Virus record (IMG/VR): IMGVR_UViG_3300013116_000108
Span: 1-64,000 of that record
Length of the DNA stretch: 64,000 nucleotides
Reading direction: 5' to 3' (one strand)
The position numbers and the translations under genes were made by a program. Numbering within the stretch: the stretch's first letter is position 1; each line of letters opens with the position of its first letter. The notes below the pieces were generated by a model. It saw only the letters and a list, made by a program, of their open reading frames with translations. It was not told the origin of the DNA and ran no database searches. Of the stretch, positions 28,873 through 44,730 are shown piece by piece.

Positions 28873-29022
28873 ATGAGTAAAGACGACCAACGTGCTTGGA
28901 ATATGTTTAAAATATCAAACGGTGGACAATTATGGACCAGTTGTGATTTATGTAAAACGTTTTGTCTTGGCTTAATTGCTGGACTTTGTATAACTTTTAT
29001 ACTTGTTGCTATTATTTTGTAG
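28873..29022 (+). CDS. 49-aa Cys-containing membrane peptide
   Basis: AAGGGA RBS; CDLC and C-terminal TM helix. Confidence 0.5.
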   Translation: MSKDDQRAWNMFKISNGGQLWTSCDLCKTFCLGLIAGLCITFILVAIIL

Positions 29023-31111
29023 TAGCAACATACACACCATCCCATTCTTTAGGTGGAGGATTTTTCTTAAATTCTTCAATCCTATCTGTGATGATTTCGT
29101 AATAACTATCTAGAGAACCACTAAACTGCCCCTTAAGATTATCAATACAATCTTTACAATGTTTCCAATCTTGTTTACGATAACTTTTTCTCAATTCTAT
29201 ATGTAGTTTAACAAATTGCATTACAGTTGGTAAGTCATGTATTCCAACAACATCAGGATCTAATACTGTGTAAATAGCAACCGGTTCTGTTTTGCCTTTT
29301 ACAGCAATTTGATCTAGTTCTAAAATTGTATGTTTATCAGATAAACTCCTTGCTGTTTCTTCGCCAAATAATATTTTCACACCATATCCTTTCGTTTGTC
29401 CTTCTAACCTAGCGGCTAAATTAACAGCATCACCTAAACAACTGTAATCAAATCTTTGATCTGATCCCATATTTCCAACTACGGCATCACCTGTATTAAG
29501 TCCAATGCCTATGTTAATTGGTAGTTTATTTTCTGCCGTTAACTGAGTATTTAACTCCTCTAATCCCTTTAACATCAATAAACTGGTATCAACTGCCTTG
29601 TCAGCCTGTTCGTCAACATCTAAAGGAGCGTTCCAAAATGCCATAATACAATCGCCCATGTATTTGTCGACCGTACCTTCTTTTTCCATAATAATATTTG
29701 TCATAGGTGTTAAGAACCTGTTAACTAATTCTGTTAAACCTTGTGGATTAGTTTTGAATTGTTCTGATATAGGAGTGAACCCTCTAATATCGCAAAACAG
29801 CAATGTAAGTTTTCTAGTATCTCCACCTAGTTTTAATAAGTCTGGATCTTTTTGTAATTTCTTAACCATGCTCGGTGCTAGGTAATGTTCAAACTGCTTT
29901 TTGATTTGTTGCTTTAATCTAAACTCTTTTACAAATCTATTAAACACAGCATGGAAGCCAACAATTAATAACATTAATGCCGGCATTGTAGGATCTATTA
30001 ACCATAACTTAGATTGGAACAAATATGTCACGCCATATACTATGCCATTTAAACTAGCAATAATAACAACACCACTAAACCAATAAGGAGCAAAGGCTAC
30101 AATAATAACAAGTAACATGCCCATAGCAATAATGCCACCTAGTTCATATAAATCCGCCCACATAGGACGTTCAACAGTTTCGCCTAATATAATTGTGCTT
30201 AGTGTACTGCCTATAATTTCATGTGGATATTTTTCACCTATAGGTGTACCAACTGGATTGCCTAATCCTTCTGCTGTTAATCCTATAATAACTGTTTTAC
30301 CTTCAATACTTTGTAAACTATCTACAGTATAATCTAATGTAGGAATGTCAGCATTCCAACGTAAAAATAATCTACCCCTGTCATCAGTTTTAATAATTCC
30401 TCTGTTAACAGGAAAACCTTTTACTCTAACACTATCTATTCCATAAGGCGTAGTTTTCATTTGATAACTGTCTACGCCCATCATTACTCTTAGTGTTTCT
30501 ACTGCTATATTAGGATATAAATCTCCTTGTACATTTATAAGCAAAGGAACACGTCTTACAACGCCATCTACCTCTGGTGCTGTAGTTATTACACCTACAC
30601 CATCAACAACGTCTGCTAGTTCTTTTAGAGGCCCTAGCATACCTGAATATGTAAACAAGTTATTAGCCGCATCTTTGTTACCGCCAACCATACTAACACC
30701 ACGTGGTATACCTGTTGTGCTTTTTTGTATGCTACCTGTTTGTGCTATAACTACACCATTCTGGTATAGTGTTTCCATAAATTCCTGATCTTTGAGAAAT
30801 CTATCTGCTTCACTAAACAGTACAGGTAATACAATAACGCCTGCTCCGTTTTCGCGAAGTTCCCAAATAAGATTGGAAATTAAATCTCTTGGCCAAGGCC
30901 ATTGGCCATTTGTTTCGATACTTGCTTCCCCCAATGTTACATAAACAAGATTATTATCTACATAAGGTTCTTCTTTTTGTAATTGATAATCAAAACTTTT
31001 TAATTTTGCTGTTTGTACTACCCAAGGATTTAAGAATACTATATAAGCAATAGCAAATACAGTTAAAAAAGGTATACTCCAATGTGTTAGAATTCTACTT
31101 AACTTCGACAT
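29012..31111 (-). CDS. CHASE2-domain class III adenylate cyclase
   Basis: N-terminal TM, CHASE2 (GQWPWPR, DGVVRRVPLL), 3 TM helices, FCDIRGFT, DKYMGD (ATP-specifying Lys), FDYSCLGDAVNLAARLE. Confidence 0.92.
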   Translation of the reverse strand: MSKLSRILTHWSIPFLTVFAIAYIVFLNPWVVQTAKLKSFDYQLQKEEPYVDNNLVYVTLGEASIETNGQWPWPRDLISNLIWELRENGAGVIVLPVLFSEADRFLKDQEFMETLYQNGVVIAQTGSIQKSTTGIPRGVSMVGGNKDAANNLFTYSGMLGPLKELADVVDGVGVITTAPEVDGVVRRVPLLINVQGDLYPNIAVETLRVMMGVDSYQMKTTPYGIDSVRVKGFPVNRGIIKTDDRGRLFLRWNADIPTLDYTVDSLQSIEGKTVIIGLTAEGLGNPVGTPIGEKYPHEIIGSTLSTIILGETVERPMWADLYELGGIIAMGMLLVIIVAFAPYWFSGVVIIASLNGIVYGVTYLFQSKLWLIDPTMPALMLLIVGFHAVFNRFVKEFRLKQQIKKQFEHYLAPSMVKKLQKDPDLLKLGGDTRKLTLLFCDIRGFTPISEQFKTNPQGLTELVNRFLTPMTNIIMEKEGTVDKYMGDCIMAFWNAPLDVDEQADKAVDTSLLMLKGLEELNTQLTAENKLPINIGIGLNTGDAVVGNMGSDQRFDYSCLGDAVNLAARLEGQTKGYGVKILFGEETARSLSDKHTILELDQIAVKGKTEPVAIYTVLDPDVVGIHDLPTVMQFVKLHIELRKSYRKQDWKHCKDCIDNLKGQFSGSLDSYYEIITDRIEEFKKNPPPKEWDGVYVATTK

Positions 31112-36966: not shown

Positions 36967-37869
36967 TTATTCTTCAAACAAATCGTCAAAGTTATTTAGA
37001 GGTTCTATTTCCTCACTAGGATCATAATTCATAATTAATAATTCTGTTCTTTCTGGTCTTATGCCAGCCGCATCAGAGCCGTCTTTTCTTACAGCACCTT
37101 CTTCTTTAACTAATCCGTTGTTTGTAATTGTTGTTTCTTCGTGCCAATAATACTGATCACGAGGTAGCATCTTTTCAAGTTCATCAAAATGATAATAACT
37201 TAATGCCCATTTACCTTTTGTTTGTTTAAGTAAATCTAGCAACTCTAAATGATCACCTTTACCAAACTCATCTTCTGTGTAATAACTTTCAAGTTTAAAA
37301 TAAGGAGGATCAACATAAAAGAAAGTATCTTTATGATCATACTTTCTAATTAAATCTCTACAATCTATATTTTCAACTGTTAAATGATTTAGTTTGTCTA
37401 AGTATCTTACTTGCTGAAACTTTTCTGTAAATGTTTTAAACTTTGCTTTATAATTTTTATTATAATACATTTTAGACTTTTCTGTTAAGCCATTTCCACC
37501 AGCAAATATCTGTAATTGGCAAAGCATATACTTTGCCGCTAAATCATAATCAGGAATAGGAAACTGTTGACTGTAAATAGAAAATACTTCATCTCTGTAT
37601 TTTGTAAAAGTATCGCCATCATGTAAATCATTATAATAACTTTTACAAGTTTGTTCCATTTTTTGAGGATCTGTACTGCTACATAAAAATACGTTTGCTA
37701 GGTGTCTGTTAAAATCATTATAAACATTTTTATCTACTGGAAATTTGCCACTCATCCAGTAACACCACATAGCACCACCAAACACTTCTACATAAGTTTT
37801 AGACTCACTAGGAAATAAAGGATCAATCCATCTGCTATGATGTTTTTTACCACCTATATACGGAAACAT
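36967..37869 (-). CDS. D12-class N6-adenine DNA methyltransferase
   Basis: YIGGK, YVEVFGGA, VYND, FYVDPPY, ELLIMNY. Confidence 0.9.
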   Translation of the reverse strand: MFPYIGGKKHHSRWIDPLFPSESKTYVEVFGGAMWCYWMSGKFPVDKNVYNDFNRHLANVFLCSSTDPQKMEQTCKSYYNDLHDGDTFTKYRDEVFSIYSQQFPIPDYDLAAKYMLCQLQIFAGGNGLTEKSKMYYNKNYKAKFKTFTEKFQQVRYLDKLNHLTVENIDCRDLIRKYDHKDTFFYVDPPYFKLESYYTEDEFGKGDHLELLDLLKQTKGKWALSYYHFDELEKMLPRDQYYWHEETTITNNGLVKEEGAVRKDGSDAAGIRPERTELLIMNYDPSEEIEPLNNFDDLFEE

Positions 37870-38969
37870 TATTCACCTATCGTTGAACTTTCGTAAACTG
37901 TGTTTAACTGATTATTAACTTGAATAAATGTAGCACACTTTGAAAGACTTTTTAACATATTAGCACCAACGTATGTACAAGCACTTCTAACACCTCCAAG
38001 TATATCTTGAATTGTATGGTCAACATTTCCTCGATAAGGTACAAGTACTGTTCTACCTTCACTTGAGCGATATTTCTTAAGTCCATCAAAGTGTTTATCG
38101 TTGGCTGTTTTACTGCTCATACCATAGAATTGTACAAATGATTTTTCTTCATAAACTTGTTCAAGTCCTTGAACTTCATTTGTAATATATTTTTTAGTGA
38201 TTATCTCGCCACCGCCTTGATCATGTCCTGCTAACATACCACCAAGCATAACGTAATCTGCTCCGCCGGCAAATGCTTTTGCTACATCACCTGGGCAAGT
38301 ACAACCGCCGTCAGCAATAATATGGCCACCGAGCCCGTGTGCCGCATCGGCACATTCGATAACTGCTGATAGTTGAGGATAACCAACGCCAGTCTTAAGC
38401 CTAGTAGTACAAACACTACCAGGGCCAATGCCCACTTTAACAATATCAGCGCCATTTAATATTAACTCCTGTGTCTGATCTGCTGTAACTACGTTACCGG
38501 CAATAATAATTATACCTGGATACTTTTTATGAAACATATGAATAAAATCTAAAAATCTTTCACTATAACCATTTGCTACATCAATACAAACATACTTTAA
38601 CCTGTCGCTAACTGCCTTATAAACATCATCAAATTTATGTCTATCATGATCTAAAATACCAATGCTCATAGCAACAAAGTTTCCCCTGTCGGGTCTTGAT
38701 GTATCATTAAAATAATTTACTAACTCTTCTACTGAATATGTTTTAACTAAACAAGTAAAAATTCTTTGCTCTGCTAATCTGTCAGCCATTTCAAATGTAC
38801 CAACTCCATCCATATTACTTGCCATAATAGGAATGCCTTCCCACTTCTTCTTACTTTTAAATGTAAATTCTCTTGTAAGTTTTACATCTTTTCTTGAACC
38901 TAATACACTACGTTTAGGTCTCAAAAGTACACTAGAATAATCTAGTTTAATATCCGGCTCAATTCTCAT
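37869..38969 (-). CDS. guaC: GMP reductase
   Basis: [59 protein letters not shown]. Confidence 0.95.
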
Positions 38970-39452: not shown

Positions 39453-39995
39453 TTACCATCTCTTAGTAACTCCAAAGTGTTTAAATGTTTTCTGAACACA
39501 TTTTGCTTGATAATAACAATCAGCCAAAGCATTATGTAAGTCTTCTTGAATTGCTTTACGCGGATCAACTGGCATTAAATTAAATAAAGTCCTCGAATCT
39601 TGTATTTGCCAAAAGTTCCACGGTGTAGGGGTGTTTAGTTGTCTATATAAATGTTCTAAAATAGCAATATCAAACACTGGTCCTTGAGCCCATATTTTGT
39701 CTACACCAACAAGACTTTTATTAAGTTGTTCTAATACTTGTGTTAAATTTGTACGTCCTTCTTCTGACAATGCTTCGTTTCTTACTTTAGCATCTTGTTT
39801 GCCCCACCAAGCCATTGTATCATCATCTACACTTCTATTTAAATCATTTTGTTCGTTGATGTCTAATTTCAGGTACAAACCATCATAAGGTTCGCTATCC
39901 GAATATGGATCAAACTTTATAGCACCTAGAGATGTAATAACACAATCTGGTTTTGTTCCAAATGTTTCTAAGTCGATCATAGCATGAACAGACAT
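39453..39995 (-). CDS. DEDDh 3'-5' exonuclease (DexA-like)
   Basis: MIDLET, WAQGPVFD, DSRT, HNALADC. Confidence 0.85.
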   Translation of the reverse strand: MSVHAMIDLETFGTKPDCVITSLGAIKFDPYSDSEPYDGLYLKLDINEQNDLNRSVDDDTMAWWGKQDAKVRNEALSEEGRTNLTQVLEQLNKSLVGVDKIWAQGPVFDIAILEHLYRQLNTPTPWNFWQIQDSRTLFNLMPVDPRKAIQEDLHNALADCYYQAKCVQKTFKHFGVTKRW

Positions 39996-39997
39996 TG

Positions 39998-40306
39998 TTA
40001 TTCCTTTTCTATTTTTACTTGTAATGGGAAACCTCTGCTTCGAGCAAGTACTGTTACTTCTATTCCTTTTTGCTCAGCAATTTCATAAGGTAATACGGCT
40101 ACTACAGCCATGCCATCCTCGTGGATTTTTACTGTAATGCCTTCAGCGTCATCTGGATTGTAATCAAATATGTCTAATAATGTTTCAACAACAAATTCCA
40201 TTGTTGTTAATTCGTCATTCATATAAATGACTTTATACAGGCCAGGTTCAGTAACTTTTATTCGTGTTACTGTGGACGGTTTTTCTTTTATTTGTGTGTC
40301 GCTCAT
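39998..40306 (-). CDS. clpS: N-degron adaptor ClpS
   Basis: PGLYKVIYMNDELTTMEFVV, VHE/IHEDG.AVV, EIAEQK, FPL. Confidence 0.93.
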   Translation of the reverse strand: MSDTQIKEKPSTVTRIKVTEPGLYKVIYMNDELTTMEFVVETLLDIFDYNPDDAEGITVKIHEDGMAVVAVLPYEIAEQKGIEVTVLARSRGFPLQVKIEKE

Positions 40307-40330
40307 AGTTACCTCTTGTTAGTAACTGTT

Positions 40331-40359
40331 ATTATAACAAAAATTGAGTATGTTGTCAA
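40331..40359 (-). promoter_or_regulatory. Sigma70-type promoter for clpS operon
   Basis: Perfect TTGACA-N17-TATAAT. Confidence 0.85.
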
Positions 40360-40365
40360 GAAAAA

Positions 40366-40400
40366 AGATAGGATTAGCCAAAATAAACTAACCCTATCTT
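40366..40400 (-). terminator. Probable intrinsic terminator after hsp20
   Basis: AAGATAGG...CCTATCTT inverted repeat with T-run on minus strand. Confidence 0.6.
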
Positions 40401-40416
40401 CAATTGTTAACTAGAA

Positions 40417-40845
40417 TTATTTGATACTAATTGTTCTTGGCTTTTTGGCCTCAGGAACAATTTTCTCCAATGATACTTTTAGTAAGCCATCTTTTAATTC
40501 CGCCCCATTTACAACTACGTCATCAGCAATAGTGAAAGATCTCTTGAATTGACGTTTTGAAATTCCTCTGTGTAATACACTTGGATCTTCGCTTTCGTCT
40601 TTTTCACTTTGAACTGAATTAACAGTTAGATTGTTATCAGCATATTTTACTTCAATGTCTTTTTTGCCAAATCCGGCTAAAGCCATTTCGATGTCATATG
40701 TGAAGTCACCTGTTTTTACGATATTGTATGGTGGAAAATTCACTTGTGGCATATCTGTCATACGTTCAAATGTATCGAACATATCGTCGAAGCCTACTGT
40801 GAATGGTTTAAGGTTATTAAAGATAGATAGTCTTGCGTTTGTCAT
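40417..40845 (-). CDS. Small heat-shock protein Hsp20/IbpA
   Basis: FPPYNI, MALAGF, LHRGISKRQF.RSF, LKDGLL, PEAKKPRTI. Confidence 0.95.
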   Translation of the reverse strand: MTNARLSIFNNLKPFTVGFDDMFDTFERMTDMPQVNFPPYNIVKTGDFTYDIEMALAGFGKKDIEVKYADNNLTVNSVQSEKDESEDPSVLHRGISKRQFKRSFTIADDVVVNGAELKDGLLKVSLEKIVPEAKKPRTISIK

Positions 40846-40903
40846 TGTTTTCTCCTTATATTAAGCAAGTTAACTTTGTGTACCCGACCTTTCGGCGTAC
40901 AAT
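40846..40903 (-). promoter_or_regulatory. ROSE-like RNA thermometer in hsp20 5' UTR
   Basis: UUGCU opposite SD AAGGAG with bulged G; upstream GAAA-capped hairpin. Confidence 0.55.
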
Positions 40904-40925
40904 AGTATTTAGCATACTATACTAT

Positions 40926-40955
40926 ATTATATAAGCATTAATGATAAAAAGTCAA
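40926..40955 (-). promoter_or_regulatory. Sigma70-type promoter for hsp20
   Basis: TTGACT-N18-TATAAT; also TAAATA at 40906-40911. Confidence 0.65.
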
Positions 40956-40980
40956 GTCTTTTTTGGAAATAAATCCAAAA

Positions 40981-41006
40981 AAAATCCCCCAATTAAGGGG
41001 GACTTT
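40981..41006 (-). terminator. GC hairpin terminator
   Basis: TCCCCC-AATTAA-GGGGGA followed by a long T-run on the minus strand. Confidence 0.7.
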
Positions 41007-41070
41007 GAATAGTGTGGGATTTTAGTTTTTTTAGAGCTCAAAAATCCCCTGGAAAGTTGCTCTTGTGTTG

Positions 41071-41403
41071 TTAGGAATAAATGGAATTATCCCCAACCAC
41101 TTCTCCGTCCTCTACTTCAAACATCGCAAGTATTGGCGAATTCAACCACTGATTTAATCCATCACTAAATTGGATCTTATCAGCAAACTTTAACTTATCT
41201 ACTGGCTTTCTAAATGAACGCTCTAGTGCTTTCATCTTAGTAGCCTGTTCTAATGTAACTTTAACAATTTCGCCGTCATCTGTTTTAACAGTATCTAGCG
41301 GTTTAATATTTTCTTGTGAATCTTCAATTTTACTAAATTGGACAAACATTTTCTGTTGCTTGTAACCCGGACCAAACTCATCATTGTCAATCTTAAAACC
41401 CAT
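41071..41403 (-). CDS. Hypothetical protein
   Basis: GAGG RBS; own promoter. Confidence 0.7.
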   Translation of the reverse strand: MGFKIDNDEFGPGYKQQKMFVQFSKIEDSQENIKPLDTVKTDDGEIVKVTLEQATKMKALERSFRKPVDKLKFADKIQFSDGLNQWLNSPILAMFEVEDGEVVGDNSIYS

Positions 41404-41435
41404 TTAGAACCTCACTTTTATTATTAATACTATGT

Positions 41436-41464
41436 ATTATACACTCTTTATATCCAAAAGTCAA
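41436..41464 (-). promoter_or_regulatory. Sigma70-type promoter
   Basis: TTGACT-N17-TATAAT. Confidence 0.8.
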
Positions 41465-41470
41465 CCAAAA

Positions 41471-42097
41471 TCACGTCTTTTTTCCACCTTTTTTACCAAC
41501 TATTAATTTAAAAATAGCATTATGTCCTTGCTGTGTGTAAGTATAATCGTAGTTATAATGGCTATTTGTGGCTATCAAATCCTCGATTTTAGCGTGGTTT
41601 TCTGTATCTATGCCATATATGTTACACCAGCGAATAAACTGCTCAGATAATGAATATTTGTGAAAATATGGGGTCATAGTAGTCTCTAATAGTGTTTCGC
41701 CTACACACGGGCGTATTTGAGCCCACTCTGTAACGATTTTAACGTCTTTTCTTATAGTTTTAATAGCATTATAAAACCCCATATTATGCTCAACCAAACT
41801 ATCCGGAGTATGTGTCATTAATAACATATCACGTCTACGAGTAAAGTTCACATCTAAGTAATTGTCATTACTCCAATTATATACAAAATTTCCTATTTTT
41901 TGATGTACAAAATCAGGAAACATTACTATTATATTCTTATGGTCTTTTTGATGTTTAATAAATTGTTGAAAGGTATCTTCGTTAGATTCTGTAACTATAA
42001 CTTTAGGTTCTTCTTTGTAATGGTCTGCTAATTGAAGAACCCAATGTCCTTCGCCGTGATTGGTTATACTAACTGTGTCATTACCTATTACTAACAT
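41471..42097 (-). CDS. Hypothetical protein, degenerate SGNH-like
   Basis: LVIGND start and C-terminal HY....QQGH..IF. Confidence 0.4.
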   Translation of the reverse strand: MLVIGNDTVSITNHGEGHWVLQLADHYKEEPKVIVTESNEDTFQQFIKHQKDHKNIIVMFPDFVHQKIGNFVYNWSNDNYLDVNFTRRRDMLLMTHTPDSLVEHNMGFYNAIKTIRKDVKIVTEWAQIRPCVGETLLETTMTPYFHKYSLSEQFIRWCNIYGIDTENHAKIEDLIATNSHYNYDYTYTQQGHNAIFKLIVGKKGGKKT

Positions 42098-42884
42098 CTA
42101 TCTTCTCTTTTACTAATTTAGCAAAGTCTTTGTTAGTTTTTGGGCCAGGATGTTTACCATCAGAACCATATTCTTGTGTATTATCTAACAACTCTAAAAT
42201 ACCTGTTTCTAGCCAGTTAGTTTTGTCAATTTTATTTGCTAACTGCTTTACATTTAGTAACGGTCCATCTTCTATTTCACTTAAAAAAGTTAAGGGATGC
42301 CACTCTCCCCAATCACCTGGATACTTAAAATCGCCTGTATAAAACCAGTCTCCTCCATTTACAAACAAGTAAGGTTGCCCTATATCTTTAAAATAGTTTT
42401 GTAAGACATAGGCATTTTTAATTAAACTTAAAAAACTAGTTGCTGAGTCTTCTAACAAAACATACTGCCTACCTCTATTGCTATCTACCCAACTACCATG
42501 TTCTATACTAGCATAACCTGTTGGACCGTTATCTACTGTCCAAAAATTTTGAGTACCTTTAACTCTAGAATGTGTCAACGTTTCATAATTACCATCTATA
42601 CTACTTTCAGTTAATTGTGTTTCGTCAGTTTGCTTTTGAATACCTATTGTTTCCCAACGTGGCAAGCCTGTCCATTGAACGACAACCATTTCAGGCTTAT
42701 AGTGTTCACAGTAACTCCATGCTCTTCTGGCTATAAAATCATTAGAACTTCCGCATACACCGTGGTTAACTACTTTAGAAAAACCCAAGTGATTGGTCCA
42801 ACTATCTTTATAACTATCTAAATAATGGTAATGGCTGTTACTACAGCCTGATATGTAAACTGTGTCTATTAGAGGTTTTGCCAC
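42081..42884 (-). CDS. SGNH/GDSL-like hydrolase
   Basis: ISGCSNS, NHGVCGSSN, VVQWT, DGKHPG. Confidence 0.65.
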   Translation of the reverse strand: MAKPLIDTVYISGCSNSHYHYLDSYKDSWTNHLGFSKVVNHGVCGSSNDFIARRAWSYCEHYKPEMVVVQWTGLPRWETIGIQKQTDETQLTESSIDGNYETLTHSRVKGTQNFWTVDNGPTGYASIEHGSWVDSNRGRQYVLLEDSATSFLSLIKNAYVLQNYFKDIGQPYLFVNGGDWFYTGDFKYPGDWGEWHPLTFLSEIEDGPLLNVKQLANKIDKTNWLETGILELLDNTQEYGSDGKHPGPKTNKDFAKLVKEKIDVSNR

Positions 42885-42894
42885 TAGTACTCAC

Positions 42895-43200
42895 CTAGTA
42901 CATTCTCTTTTGAGAAAATCCCCATTGTGCTTCTTGTTCACGTTGTTTCTTTAACCAACGATTACGGCCTGCTTTTTTGGCTAGTCTTTTCTTTTCGCTA
43001 GGTTTTATAAAATACTGCCTATCTCGACATTCTTGTAAAGTATTGTCTGCTTGGAGTTTTTTCTTTAGTTTTCTTAATGCCTTTGTGACATCATTGTTGT
43101 GAACTATAACAGTTGTTCCACCTGTTAAATCTTGAGCTCTTTTAGGTTGATTTCTATTACCAAAGCCTGCTCTGTTATTGCTTTTTCTATTTACAAACAT
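42895..43200 (-). CDS. rpsU: Ribosomal protein bS21
   Basis: V.V.NNDVTKALRKLKKK....E...RQYF.KPSEKKR. Confidence 0.88.
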   Translation of the reverse strand: MFVNRKSNNRAGFGNRNQPKRAQDLTGGTTVIVHNNDVTKALRKLKKKLQADNTLQECRDRQYFIKPSEKKRLAKKAGRNRWLKKQREQEAQWGFSQKRMY

Positions 43201-44363
43201 TAAGCCTCCTGTACGTCTGTGTCATTAATAATTACTTCCTTTCCTTTAAGTTGATCTAACTCGTAATAGTATTCAAGCAAAGTATTTTCTAATATACCTT
43301 TTAATGCTCTAGCACCTACCTTATATTGTAACGCAAGTTCGACTATTTTGTCAAGTGCTTTCTCCGAAAATATCAAACTAACATTATCTAAATCAAAATA
43401 GAACCTAGTTTGCTCAATTAGGTTATTATCAATATCAGCCAATACTTGTTTTAATTCATCTTTGGAAAGTTCTGTTGTTTGAACAACAACTGGAAAGCGA
43501 CCAATAAATTCAGGTATCATTCCAAAGTCAATTAACTCGCTTGAAATTAGTTTACTTTGGCCTCCGTGTGTTTCTCCAAACCCAATAGTATTTGTTTTTT
43601 GGCTGTCCATTCCAACAAATGCTCCACTTCCAATAAACAAAATCTTACTAGTATCTACTTCAATCATTTCTTGCTGTGGATGTTTTCTTCCACCTTGTGG
43701 TGCTACTCTAACAGTTGTACCTTCAACTAATTTTAACAATGCTTGTTGTACACCTTCGCCTGAAACATCTCTAGTAATTGAAACGTTCTCACTTTTCCTG
43801 CCAATTTTATCAATTTCATCTAAAAATACAATACCTTGTTCTGCTCTTGCTACATTGTAATCTACTTTCATTAGCAAAGAACTAATAATACTTTCAACAT
43901 CATCACCAACATACCCACTTTCAGTTAAACTTGTAGCATCAGCAATTACAATAGGCACATCTAAAAACTTAGCAATTTGTTTTGCCATAAAAGTTTTACC
44001 ACTACCAGTAGGACCAATTATTAATTGATTATTCTTTTCAATAGTACCTTTTCTATCATACATTAATCTCTTGTAGTGATTTACTACACCTACTGCCATA
44101 TGACGTTTTGCTTTATGTTGTCCAACTACTGTTTCGTCTAAAAATGCTACAATCTCTTTTGCTGTTTTGGGTTCTAATTCCTTTGCCCATTGCTTTGCCT
44201 TTTCATCTGTGAGGACTTTACTACACAAATCTATACATTCATCACAAATACCAACACCTTCTGCTACAATAATCTTGTATACTTGGTCTTTTGTTTTGCC
44301 ACAAAAATTACACTGACTGACTGAACGAATTTGATCTATACTAGTTGATTTATCATCTGTCAT
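43200..44363 (-). CDS. clpX: ATP-dependent Clp protease ATP-binding subunit ClpX
   Basis: Zinc finger CNFCGK..CDEC, GPTGSGKT, GYVG pore loop, DEIDK, RDVSGEGVQQALLK, RKH loop, IGF loop; start 44363 or 44393. Confidence 0.96.
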   Translation of the reverse strand: MTDDKSTSIDQIRSVSQCNFCGKTKDQVYKIIVAEGVGICDECIDLCSKVLTDEKAKQWAKELEPKTAKEIVAFLDETVVGQHKAKRHMAVGVVNHYKRLMYDRKGTIEKNNQLIIGPTGSGKTFMAKQIAKFLDVPIVIADATSLTESGYVGDDVESIISSLLMKVDYNVARAEQGIVFLDEIDKIGRKSENVSITRDVSGEGVQQALLKLVEGTTVRVAPQGGRKHPQQEMIEVDTSKILFIGSGAFVGMDSQKTNTIGFGETHGGQSKLISSELIDFGMIPEFIGRFPVVVQTTELSKDELKQVLADIDNNLIEQTRFYFDLDNVSLIFSEKALDKIVELALQYKVGARALKGILENTLLEYYYELDQLKGKEVIINDTDVQEA

Positions 44364-44730
44364 TTGAGAGCCTTTTTTGTAATATCCAGTCAACTGGAAC
44401 TGTTAGTTTTCTATTATTTAATGAATCGTAATTCTCTTCATGATGTATATCATCACACCACCAAACGTTTGGCATAGACATCAAGTACCCTGTAACAATT
44501 TTATTTTCATATTCATTGCTTACAATAACTACAGATGATCTAGTTGCTGTATTAACAATCCAATCAACTTTGCTATTTTGTTCGCCTATGTGTAAACTAT
44601 AATCGCCGTATTTAGGTAATTCCTTAATATATTGCTCAACTGTCCAGTTATCACAACCTACAAGGAATACACTTTCTTGTTTACCAAACCAATAATCTGG
44701 TTCTGTTACTACTGTTACATTATTGTCCAA
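44353..44730 (-). CDS. Hypothetical protein
   Basis: Operon-packed. Confidence 0.6.
   Translation of the reverse strand: MDNNVTVVTEPDYWFGKQESVFLVGCDNWTVEQYIKELPKYGDYSLHIGEQNSKVDWIVNTATRSSVVIVSNEYENKIVTGYLMSMPNVWWCDDIHHEENYDSLNNRKLTVPVDWILQKRLSNDR

What the first reader, a model, noticed from the sequence alone, without database searches (positions are those of the whole stretch)
40846..40903. ROSE-like RNA thermometer on the phage hsp20
Seen: the 5' UTR has a GAAA-capped hairpin (UGUAC-GCC-GAAA-GGU-CGG-GUACA), then CUUGCUU-AAUAU-AAGGAG. Known: ROSE elements use U(U/C)GCU pairing with the SD around a bulged G and control small HSP genes in alpha- and gammaproteobacteria. A virus-borne temperature sensor would be notable.
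Basis: partly seen in the sequence, partly recalled or inferred. Interest (0 to 1): 0.6.

Follow-up and report, generated by a model that had tools for sequence, protein, structure and literature searches.

The report
ROSE-like thermometer leader, phage hsp20
The small heat-shock gene of this marine T4-like phage is preceded by the same two-hairpin RNA design that proteobacteria use as a heat-sensing switch. That design is kept in every one of about 300 related ocean-phage and SAR11-host hsp20 genes examined, so it is a real, conserved control element whose temperature response still has to be tested.

Summary
On the minus strand, ahead of hsp20 (40417-40845), lie a stable hairpin (40901-40879) and a weak hairpin (40874-40847). 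In the weak hairpin UUGCU (40868-40864) pairs with the Shine-Dalgarno AAGGAG (40857-40852) around a bulged G (40866).

- **Rfam:** the only credible match is ROSE_3, the short Pseudomonas ibpA thermometer. It scores 30.5 bits, below the curated 43.
- **Conservation:** the decisive evidence is comparative. All 305 hsp20 leaders examined (232 distinct) carry YYGCU. They come from pelagiphages, two cyanophage clades, a Pseudomonas jumbo phage and SAR11 bacteria.
- **Pairing:** the six core pairs are 99% canonical, against 54-76% when slid. The outermost pair switches C-G to G-C in a whole cyanophage clade. Hairpin 1 covaries at every lower-stem pair.
- **Cross-validation:** a model built from pelagiphages alone finds the SAR11 and cyanophage leaders at the right place.
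- **Origin:** SAR11 hosts carry the same leader behind sigma-32-like promoters; phages carry it behind phage-type promoters.

Best reading: a short ROSE-like translational control leader, shared by phage and host. Temperature response is inferred, not shown. Hsp20 self-repression through the leader is a live alternative or addition. I class it as a new member of a known kind. No paper in the searched library describes it in phages.

The parts
40981..41006 (-). Intrinsic-terminator-like hairpin plus U-run. It ends the upstream gene (41071-41403) and isolates hsp20 as its own unit.
   Evidence: 10-bp stem, 5 GC pairs, T-run; sequence
40926..40955 (-). Sigma-70-like promoter, TTGACT (40955-40950), 18 nt, TATAAT (40931-40926). 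The predicted start is near 40920.
   Evidence: 11 of 12 matches. The same promoter is in the closest relatives L004 and L005. The TSS is inferred, not mapped.
40902..40920 (-). Hairpin 0 (7-bp A/U-rich stem), present only in the window's clade. Its loop and 3' arm hold GCTAAATA (40913-40906), a degenerate copy of the TATAAATA box that precedes hairpin 1 in 50 of 54 pelagiphage-type leaders.
   Evidence: -7.2 kcal/mol at 20 C
40879..40901 (-). Hairpin 1: a 5-bp lower stem, bulged G 40896, a 4-bp G+C upper stem and a 4-nt loop. It is predicted to be stable and not to respond to temperature.
   Evidence: -13.0 at 20 C, -9.6 at 37 C. Covariation at all lower-stem pairs. The architecture is in 228 of 232 leaders against <=1% of shuffles.
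40847..40874 (-). Hairpin 2, the putative thermosensor. It has an outer GUU/AAC stem and an AA/AA internal loop. CUU-[G40866]-CUUA then pairs with UAAG-GAG.
   Evidence: -5.8 at 5 C, -3.3 at 20 C, -0.9 at 37 C
40864..40868 (-). ROSE motif UUGCU (anti-SD). G40866 is the predicted bulge.
   Evidence: YYGCU is in 232 of 232 distinct leaders, as UUGCU or UCGCU.
40852..40857 (-). Shine-Dalgarno AAGGAG, 6 nt before the start codon.
   Evidence: paired to the anti-SD
40417..40845 (-). hsp20 (small heat-shock protein, 142 aa). The start codon 40845-40843 is predicted to be unpaired.
   Evidence: PF00011, 66 bits; phrog_432. R98 and F37 align with IbpA R93 and Y34.
40364..40401 (-). Terminator-like hairpin that closes the hsp20 unit.

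Best explanation
This is a short ROSE-like translational control leader of the phage's hsp20 mRNA. It is homologous in design to the two-hairpin ibpA thermometers of Pseudomonas, and it is shared with the hsp20 genes of SAR11 bacteria. The gene and its leader have evidently moved together between SAR11 and its phages.

Proposed mechanism:
1. The mRNA starts upstream of the hairpins. In this phage the promoter is sigma-70-like and adds a third, 5'-terminal hairpin. In most relatives the start follows a TATAAATA box placed 5 nt before hairpin 1.
2. Hairpin 1 is stable. It probably nucleates folding and protects the 5' end.
3. Hairpin 2 is weak. Its UUGCU pairs with the AAGGAG ribosome-binding site around a bulged G, so 30S binding is hindered in the cold.
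4. As temperature rises the hairpin opens and translation is allowed.

What is shown: the sequence, its conservation, covariation, gene context and the relation to the host. What is inferred: the transcription start, SD occlusion in vivo, and the response to temperature.
For: - **Rfam.** The only credible match is ROSE_3, full length and on the right strand, abutting the ATG. A Pseudomonas ibpA leader scores 69 bits in the same test, which serves as a positive control.
- **Conservation.** All 80 IMG/VR relatives, HTVC008M and Mosig have the leader. So do 160 cyanophage loci, P-TIM40, syn9, S-RSM4, S-N03 and the Pseudomonas phage Deifobo, and 79 SAR11 genomes.
- **Hairpin 2.** YYGCU is in 232 of 232 distinct leaders. 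The core pairs are 99% canonical against 54-76% when slid. U.G alternates with C-G (126 and 106 leaders), which is exactly the U(U/C)GCU variation. The outer pair is C-G in 161, G-C in 52 and U-G in 18.
- **Structure counts.** 93% and 90.5% of cells are paired. The covariation score is 0.37-0.42 against 0.15-0.17 in shuffles (0 of 500 reach it). Hairpin 1 has changes on both sides at 7 of 8 pairs.
- **Cross-validation.** The pelagiphage-only model R1 finds SAR11 and cyanophage leaders ending exactly at ATG+5. It finds one real hit per genome in 4 SAR11 genomes and in the 204 kb phage record.
- **Energetics.** The pattern matches published short ROSE-like elements (PMC3669281). Hairpin 1 is -9.6 kcal/mol at 37 C. 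Hairpin 2 goes from -5.8 at 5 C to -0.9 at 37 C. Deleting the bulged G stabilises it to -7.5 at 20 C.
- **Virus identity.** The record is a T4-like virus, with Gp23 capsid and terminase.
Against: - The ROSE_3 score of 30.5 bits is below the curated 43. Relatives score 30 bits or less, and SAR11 leaders give no Rfam hit at E <= 1.
- For the single sequence, the stability of hairpin 2 is not better than shuffles (32 of 100).
- When 20 nt of coding sequence are included, the MFE prefers CUUGC pairing with GCAAG in codons 4-6. P(SD paired) then falls to 0.2-0.3.
- Most hairpin 2 columns are invariant, so covariation there rests on few events. The SD itself is under separate constraint.
- No TSS or temperature data exist. 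The metatranscriptome evidence is contigs only.
- Open-ocean hosts see small temperature swings, so a heat switch has no obvious ecological rationale.
Confidence: 0.65

Rival explanations
1. The leader is mainly an operator for the chaperone itself. Free Hsp20 binds its own 5' UTR and represses translation. Unfolded or aggregating proteins, for instance the flood of capsid proteins late in infection, titrate Hsp20 away and release the block. It would then be an aggregation sensor rather than, or as well as, a thermometer.
For: - E. coli, Cedecea and Vibrio IbpA repress their own translation through their ROSE-type 5' UTRs. This needs R93 and an aromatic residue at position 34, and both residues are reported as conserved in alpha-proteobacterial IbpAs (PMC10474464).
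- In my alignment with Salmonella IbpA, the window's R98 aligns with R93, R102 with R97 and F37 with Y34. The Arg is kept in SAR11, pelagiphage and cyanophage proteins.
- Conservation of the sequence of hairpin 1 (bulged G followed by C, then GG) goes beyond what pairing needs, which suits a protein-binding site.
- It would explain why phages of thermally stable waters keep the leader.
Against:
- K98 of IbpA is Ser in the window protein.
- The Deifobo protein has Lys at the R93 position yet keeps the leader.
- This reading does not exclude thermosensing. In E. coli both mechanisms act on one UTR.
Confidence: 0.35
2. The leader is a constitutive mRNA element, a 5' stabilising hairpin plus a ribosome-binding region. 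It is kept because it came with the gene and has no regulatory switching.
For: - Hairpin 1 sits at the predicted 5' end in most relatives (TATAAATA, 5 nt, then the stem). A 5'-terminal stem-loop is a known stabiliser, as discussed in PMC3669281.
- Hairpin 2 is predicted to be weak: -3.3 kcal/mol at 20 C.
- Shuffles do as well.
Against: A mere stabiliser does not explain several observations:
- the invariant YYGCU placed so as to pair with the SD in 232 of 232 leaders;
- the coupled C-G to G-C change together with an SD change (GGAG to GGAC) in a whole cyanophage clade;
- the coupled extra U in the anti-SD with an extra G in the SD among pelagiphages.
Confidence: 0.12
3. The resemblance is chance, or the conserved CUUGCUUA block is a DNA signal and not an RNA structure. 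One candidate is a T4 MotA-box-like middle promoter element (TGCTT).
For: - The block contains TGCTTA, which resembles the T4 Mot box (own knowledge).
- The Rfam score is sub-threshold.
Against: - The same block is in 75 of 75 distinct bacterial SAR11 leaders, and bacteria have no MotA.
- A box 25 nt before the ATG would start transcription inside the gene.
- Hairpin 1 covariation and pairing-preserving changes are properties of RNA.
- Only one hit is found per genome, always at hsp20.
Confidence: 0.02

Closest known systems
Short ROSE-like RNA thermometers of Pseudomonas ibpA (Rfam ROSE_3, RF02523; Krajewski et al. 2013, PMC3669281)
   Same: - Two hairpins in the 5' UTR of a small heat-shock gene.
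- A G+C-rich stable hairpin I with a 5' bulged G followed by CC(G).
- A short hairpin II in which U(U/C)GCU pairs with the SD around a bulged G.
- An unpaired AUG.
- It is the best and only credible Rfam hit.
   Different: - The score is 30.5 bits against a cut-off of 43.
- Hairpin II is A/U-rich and much weaker, lacking the flanking G-C clamps stressed for Pseudomonas.
- The element is phage-borne and sits behind phage-type promoters.
- This window has an extra 5' hairpin.
Classical ROSE elements (ROSE1 of Bradyrhizobium, RF00435; E. coli/Salmonella ibpA, ROSE_2 RF01832)
   Same: The same anti-SD motif, bulged G and gene class. In the SAR11 hosts the leader follows a sigma-32-like promoter, as in the classical cases.
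   Different: - The classical elements have three to four hairpins and a longer final hairpin that often includes the AUG.
- No Rfam hit to RF00435 appears here.
- Only a 26-bit ROSE_2 hit is found, in one cyanophage (S-N03).
Known phage RNA thermometers: lambda cIII, SPbeta blyA (fourU), gut Caudoviricetes sigma-70 (fourU) (PMC11182007)
   Same: They are cis-acting 5' UTR structures in phage genes that are proposed or shown to sense temperature.
   Different: They use different motifs (an alternative-structure switch, or fourU) and control different genes. They come from temperate or gut phages. None is ROSE-type, and none is conserved across a large phage family.
Cyanobacterial hsp17 thermometer (Synechocystis; cited in PMC3669281)
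   Same: It controls a small heat-shock gene in the host phylum of the cyanophages that carry the present leader.
   Different: It is a single short hairpin without the U(U/C)GCU motif (own knowledge). The cyanophage leaders follow the proteobacterial ROSE design instead.
freshwater-2 RNA motif (Rfam RF02980)
   Same: It has two hairpins followed by AAGGAGAAAAcAAAUG, and it gives a weak hit over 40843-40919.
   Different: The score is 22 bits against a cut-off of 49.9. Its consensus has no UUGCU anti-SD and no bulged G. I do not file the leader there.

Membership tests
ROSE-like RNA thermometers | Located in the 5' UTR of a small heat-shock (Hsp20/IbpA) gene | tested here: met
   The leader abuts the ATG of a Pfam HSP20 / phrog_432 gene. 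Predicted promoters and an upstream terminator bracket it.
ROSE-like RNA thermometers | [quoted passage not shown] | tested here: met
   Three predicted hairpins here and two in relatives. The structure is supported by covariation and slide controls.
ROSE-like RNA thermometers | Conserved U(U/C)GCU anti-SD motif imperfectly paired with the SD | tested here: met
   UUGCU lies at 40868-40864. The motif is in 232 of 232 distinct leaders as UUGCU or UCGCU, and the pairs are 99% canonical.
ROSE-like RNA thermometers | Bulged G opposite the SD | tested here: met
   G40866 is unpaired in the Rfam alignment, in RNAfold and in the consensus structure. This is a prediction only; no probing was done.
ROSE-like RNA thermometers | Non-canonical pairs in the sensor helix (G-G pair, base triple) seen by NMR in ROSE1 | not testable with these tools
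   This needs NMR or structure probing.
ROSE-like RNA thermometers | Temperature-dependent melting of the SD hairpin and temperature-dependent translation | not testable with these tools
   Only nearest-neighbour energies are available. Hairpin 2 goes from -5.8 kcal/mol at 5 C to -0.9 at 37 C, while hairpin 1 is still -9.6 at 37 C.
ROSE-like RNA thermometers | Occurrence in alpha- or gamma-proteobacteria | tested here: inconclusive
   The same leader precedes hsp20 in 79 SAR11 (alpha-proteobacterial) genomes. It is also in cyanophages. The cyanobacterial hosts could not be examined, and the host of this phage is unknown.
Rfam ROSE_3 (RF02523) | Score at or above the curated gathering threshold (43 bits) | tested here: not met
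   The window scores 30.5 bits. The best relative scores 30 bits. The Pseudomonas control scores 69.2 bits.
Rfam ROSE (RF00435) and ROSE_2 (RF01832) | Any match at E <= 10 in the leader | tested here: not met
   Neither is listed for the window. ROSE_2 scores 26 bits in cyanophage S-N03 only.
IbpA-type self-repressing sHsp / 5' UTR pair | Arg equivalent to IbpA R93 and an aromatic residue equivalent to Y34 in the protein | tested here: met
   R98 and F37 of the window protein align with R93 and Y34 of Salmonella IbpA. The requirement is taken from PMC10474464. Binding itself was not tested.

The most novel reading that the evidence does not exclude
The ROSE-type leader may be an ancient module, maintained across the whole lineage of marine T4-like phages (Kyanoviridae). 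On this reading it works even in cyanobacterial hosts, outside the alpha/gamma-proteobacterial range known for ROSE. In phages it would act chiefly as a proteostasis sensor: Hsp20 represses its own mRNA until virion proteins titrate it away. Hsp20 supply would then be tied to capsid load and water temperature during infection.
Probability: 0.25. Interest if true: 0.8.

Novelty: new member of a known kind. Interest (0 to 1): 0.62.

Why it matters
hsp20 is among the most widely kept 'host-like' genes of marine T4-like phages. Homologues are in 507 GenBank phage records, mostly cyanophages, yet how it is controlled is unknown.

A conserved ROSE-type leader gives a concrete, testable mechanism:
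- It would be the first ROSE-class element in viruses.
- It would be by far the most widespread candidate phage thermometer.
- It would extend the class to SAR11, the most abundant marine bacteria, which current Rfam models miss.

If it responds to temperature or to protein aggregation, infection by abundant ocean phages has a built-in physical sensor. That bears on how viral lysis responds to warming.

It also shows a phage capturing a gene together with its RNA switch while replacing the host sigma-32 promoter with phage promoters.

Tried and rejected
- **Single-sequence thermodynamics.** The whole leader gives z = -2.7. The SD hairpin is not better than shuffles (32 of 100), and a CDS-including fold prefers another pairing. 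I therefore did not rest the case on energies.
- **freshwater-2 (RF02980).** It scores 22 bits and lacks the anti-SD motif, so it was rejected.
- **Other Rfam hits in the region** (STnc340, csRNA, snoRNAs and others). They have E of about 0.1 or more, are far below their cut-offs and lie on irrelevant strands or contexts.
- **GAAA-tetraloop reading of hairpin 1.** It is not conserved.
- **MotA-box or promoter reading of CUUGCUUA.** It was rejected because the block is present in bacterial genomes and is wrongly placed.
- **Coding leader.** There is an in-frame TAA 18 nt upstream, and the indels among relatives are not multiples of three.
- **Second model hits.** G000:139958-140043 (22 bits) is only a TATAAATA box before a structural gene. 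The extra hit in one SAR11 genome is a degenerate leader before a 9-codon ORF.
- **Metatranscriptome contigs.** They cover hsp20 and run into the leader, but they cannot give a start, a strand or a level.
- **Literature searches.** Phage or cyanophage with hsp20 and thermometer, ROSE with phage, Pelagibacter with RNA thermometer, and freshwater-2 found no prior description.
- **blastn of Pseudomonas ibpA against E. coli genomes.** It found nothing. I used a Salmonella record instead.
- **Protein tree.** Only the quick version finished. It shows pelagiphage and SAR11 Hsp20 interleaved but does not give a direction of transfer.

Full report
**What is there.** The gene at 40417-40845 on the minus strand encodes a 142-aa Hsp20/alpha-crystallin protein. 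Read on the minus strand, the upstream region holds these features in order:
- a terminator-like hairpin with a U-run (41006-40981);
- a sigma-70-like promoter, TTGACT-18 nt-TATAAT (40955-40926);
- an A/U-rich hairpin 0 (40920-40902);
- hairpin 1 (40901-40879), with a 5' bulged G at 40896;
- a 4-nt linker;
- hairpin 2 (40874-40847), in which CUU-[G40866]-CUUA pairs with UAAG-GAG, so that UUGCU (40868-40864) sits against the SD AAGGAG (40857-40852);
- six further bases, then the ATG (40845-40843).

Only the 'GAAA-capped' drawing of hairpin 1 is not the conserved fold.

**Is it more than chance?** Against all 4227 Rfam families, the one credible match in 1.2 kb is ROSE_3. It is full length, on the right strand, and ends at the start codon. 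It scores 30.5 bits with E = 4.8e-4, and E = 1.9e-5 for that family over the whole 204 kb record. This is below Rfam's curated 43 bits. A Pseudomonas ibpA leader that happened to be in the phage database scores 69 bits in the same test. By Rfam's rule, therefore, this is not a ROSE_3 member. Folding energy of the single sequence is weak evidence. The leader has z = -2.7. The SD hairpin alone does no better than 32 of 100 shuffles of its 5' half. With 20 nt of coding sequence added, the MFE prefers CUUGC pairing with GCAAG in codons 4-6.

**Comparative evidence decides the matter.**
- The nearest cultured relatives of the gene are Pelagibacter phages HTVC008M and Mosig.
- All 80 IMG/VR loci fetched with the protein, and both isolates, have the same leader plan: a TATAAATA box, 5 nt, hairpin 1, a variable linker, AACUUGCUUAA, a variable loop, AAGGAG, then ATG.
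- On a model-based alignment, hairpin 1 has changes on both sides at 7 of 8 pairs and 96% of its cells are paired. Overall covariation exceeds all 500 shuffles and all slid controls.
- The same plan appeared in cyanophages P-TIM40, syn9, S-RSM4 and S-N03, and in the Pseudomonas jumbo phage Deifobo.
- It also appeared in every one of 160 further cyanophage loci, and in 79 SAR11 genomes whose Hsp20 is about 60% identical to the phage protein.

**Counts over 305 loci (232 distinct leaders).**
- YYGCU is present in all 232 leaders.
- The six core pairs flanking the bulged G are 99% canonical, against 54-76% when the 3' partner is slid.
- The pair next to the bulge is U.G in 126 leaders and C-G in 106, which is the U(U/C)GCU alternation that defines ROSE.
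- The outermost pair is C-G in 161, U-G in 18 and G-C in 52. The G-C cases form a whole cyanophage clade in which the SD reads GGAC and the anti-SD reads GUCGCU.
- Among pelagiphages, an extra U in the anti-SD goes with an extra G in the SD.
- Hairpin 1's design (a lower stem of at least 4 bp, a bulged G followed by C, a 2-4 bp upper stem) is in 228 of 232 leaders, as 122 different sequences, against 1% or less of shuffles.
- The pelagiphage-only model finds SAR11 and cyanophage leaders at exactly the right place. A mixed alignment of 74 distinct leaders gives 90.5% paired cells and a covariation score of 0.42 against 0.17 in shuffles.
- The model hits only hsp20 leaders in the phage record and in four SAR11 genomes.

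**Where it comes from.** The record is a T4-like virus, with a Gp23 capsid protein and a large terminase. In SAR11 the leader follows sigma-32-like boxes (CTTGAAA, then CCCATAT). In most pelagiphage-type contigs it follows TATAAATA, the T4 late-promoter consensus (own knowledge), placed so that transcription would begin at the foot of hairpin 1. Some contigs keep half of the sigma-32 boxes. This window's clade has a degenerate box (GCTAAATA) inside an extra hairpin and a sigma-70-like promoter further upstream. TATAAATA is depleted in the window, with 2 copies against 11.4 expected. A quick protein tree puts pelagiphage and SAR11 Hsp20 in one clade, interleaved, with the cyanophage clades apart. 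The direction of transfer is not resolved. The simplest inference is that the gene and its RNA leader travelled together while the promoters were exchanged.

**How it most likely works.** Published work on the two-hairpin Pseudomonas elements shows three things. Hairpin II alone confers thermoregulation. It melts between 25 and 42 C. The G+C-rich hairpin I stays closed and may aid folding or protect the 5' end (PMC3669281). The energetics here have the same shape. Hairpin 1 is -13.0 kcal/mol at 20 C and -9.6 at 37 C. Hairpin 2 is -5.8 at 5 C, -3.3 at 20 C and -0.9 at 37 C. Removing the bulged G stabilises hairpin 2 to -7.5 at 20 C. I therefore propose SD occlusion in the cold and opening on warming, tuned to lower temperatures than in Pseudomonas. 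This step is inferred.

**A serious alternative or addition.** IbpA-type self-repression could also act on this leader. IbpA binds its own ROSE-type UTR and needs R93 and an aromatic residue at position 34 (PMC10474464). The window protein has Arg and Phe at the aligned positions, and the Arg is kept in SAR11, pelagiphage and cyanophage proteins. For a phage in thermally stable water, sensing protein load may make more sense than sensing heat.

**Expression.** Metatranscriptome contigs from three studies cover the hsp20 coding region nearly identically and run into the leader. The 35 nt around the SD hairpin are shared with other, highly covered hsp20 transcripts that have different first hairpins. 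These are contigs from RNA libraries. They show presence but not a start site, a strand or a level.

**Comparison and novelty.** In design this is a short ROSE-like element. All sequence-level defining features are met. The Rfam threshold is not met, and the functional features cannot be tested here. The phage thermometers named in the literature I could search are lambda cIII, SPbeta blyA and a gut-phage sigma-70 element, none of them ROSE-type (PMC11182007). Searches for a prior description in phages, cyanophages or Pelagibacter found nothing. Subscription journals are not covered by that library. I rate it a new member of a known kind. What is notable is its breadth: essentially every marine T4-like phage hsp20 examined carries it. 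It is also found in cyanophages, whose hosts are not known to use ROSE elements, although I could not examine those hosts.

Noticed in passing
window 39453-44393 (-): A phage-borne proteostasis and translation cluster lies around hsp20. It comprises a ClpX-like ATPase (43200-44393), ribosomal protein S21 (42895-43200), hsp20, the ClpS adaptor (39998-40306) and an Rv2179c-like 3'-5' exoribonuclease (39453-39995).
   Followed up: partly
window 29012-31111 (-): A 699-aa ORF has a CHASE2 sensor domain and an adenylate/guanylate cyclase domain, which is unusual cargo for a phage. An IMPDH/GMP-reductase-like ORF lies at 37869-38969.
   Followed up: no
window 40879-40901 (-) and 228 of 232 related leaders: Hairpin 1 repeats the design of the sensor hairpin. 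It has a 5' bulged G followed by C(C), facing a G-rich, SD-like 3' strand. This could be an old duplication, a decoy or standby site, or a protein-binding determinant.
   Followed up: partly
window 40865-40869 and 40827-40831 (-): CUUGC of the anti-SD can pair instead with GCAAG in codons 4-6 of hsp20. RNAfold prefers this when the coding start is included. It is possible only in the window's close clade.
   Followed up: partly
window, whole: TATAAATA occurs twice (28638, 54344) where 11.4 copies are expected. Such depletion would be expected if the motif is a functional late promoter that is avoided elsewhere. The window looks like an early-gene region with sigma-70-like promoters.
   Followed up: no
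window 40331-40359 (-): A perfect TTGACA-17 nt-TATAAT promoter with an upstream TG sits directly after the hsp20 terminator (40401-40364) and before clpS.
   Followed up: no
L012-type and L038/Mosig-type loci, about 30-60 nt upstream of hairpin 1: Phage promoters look like hybrids of the host sigma-32 boxes and the late box. Some keep CTTGAAA and others keep CCCCATAT fused to TATAAATA (CCCCATATAAATA).
   Followed up: partly
L086 (S-RSM4) 1-291 and L087 (S-N03) 1-323: In these cyanophages hsp20 lies immediately downstream of regA, the T4-type translational repressor.
   Followed up: no
L336 (SAR11 genome G004, C1:219670-219740, -): A second, degenerate copy of the leader has hairpin 1 and ACUUGCUAA but no SD. 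It sits before a 9-codon ORF that begins MSK like the intact hsp20, so it may be a pseudogene remnant.
   Followed up: partly
L089 (OQ572409.1, 'UNVERIFIED Pseudomonas phage Y7'): This 22.6 kb record carries a bona fide ROSE_3 (69 bits) and an ibpA gene typical of Pseudomonas aeruginosa. It looks like bacterial DNA filed as a phage.
   Followed up: no
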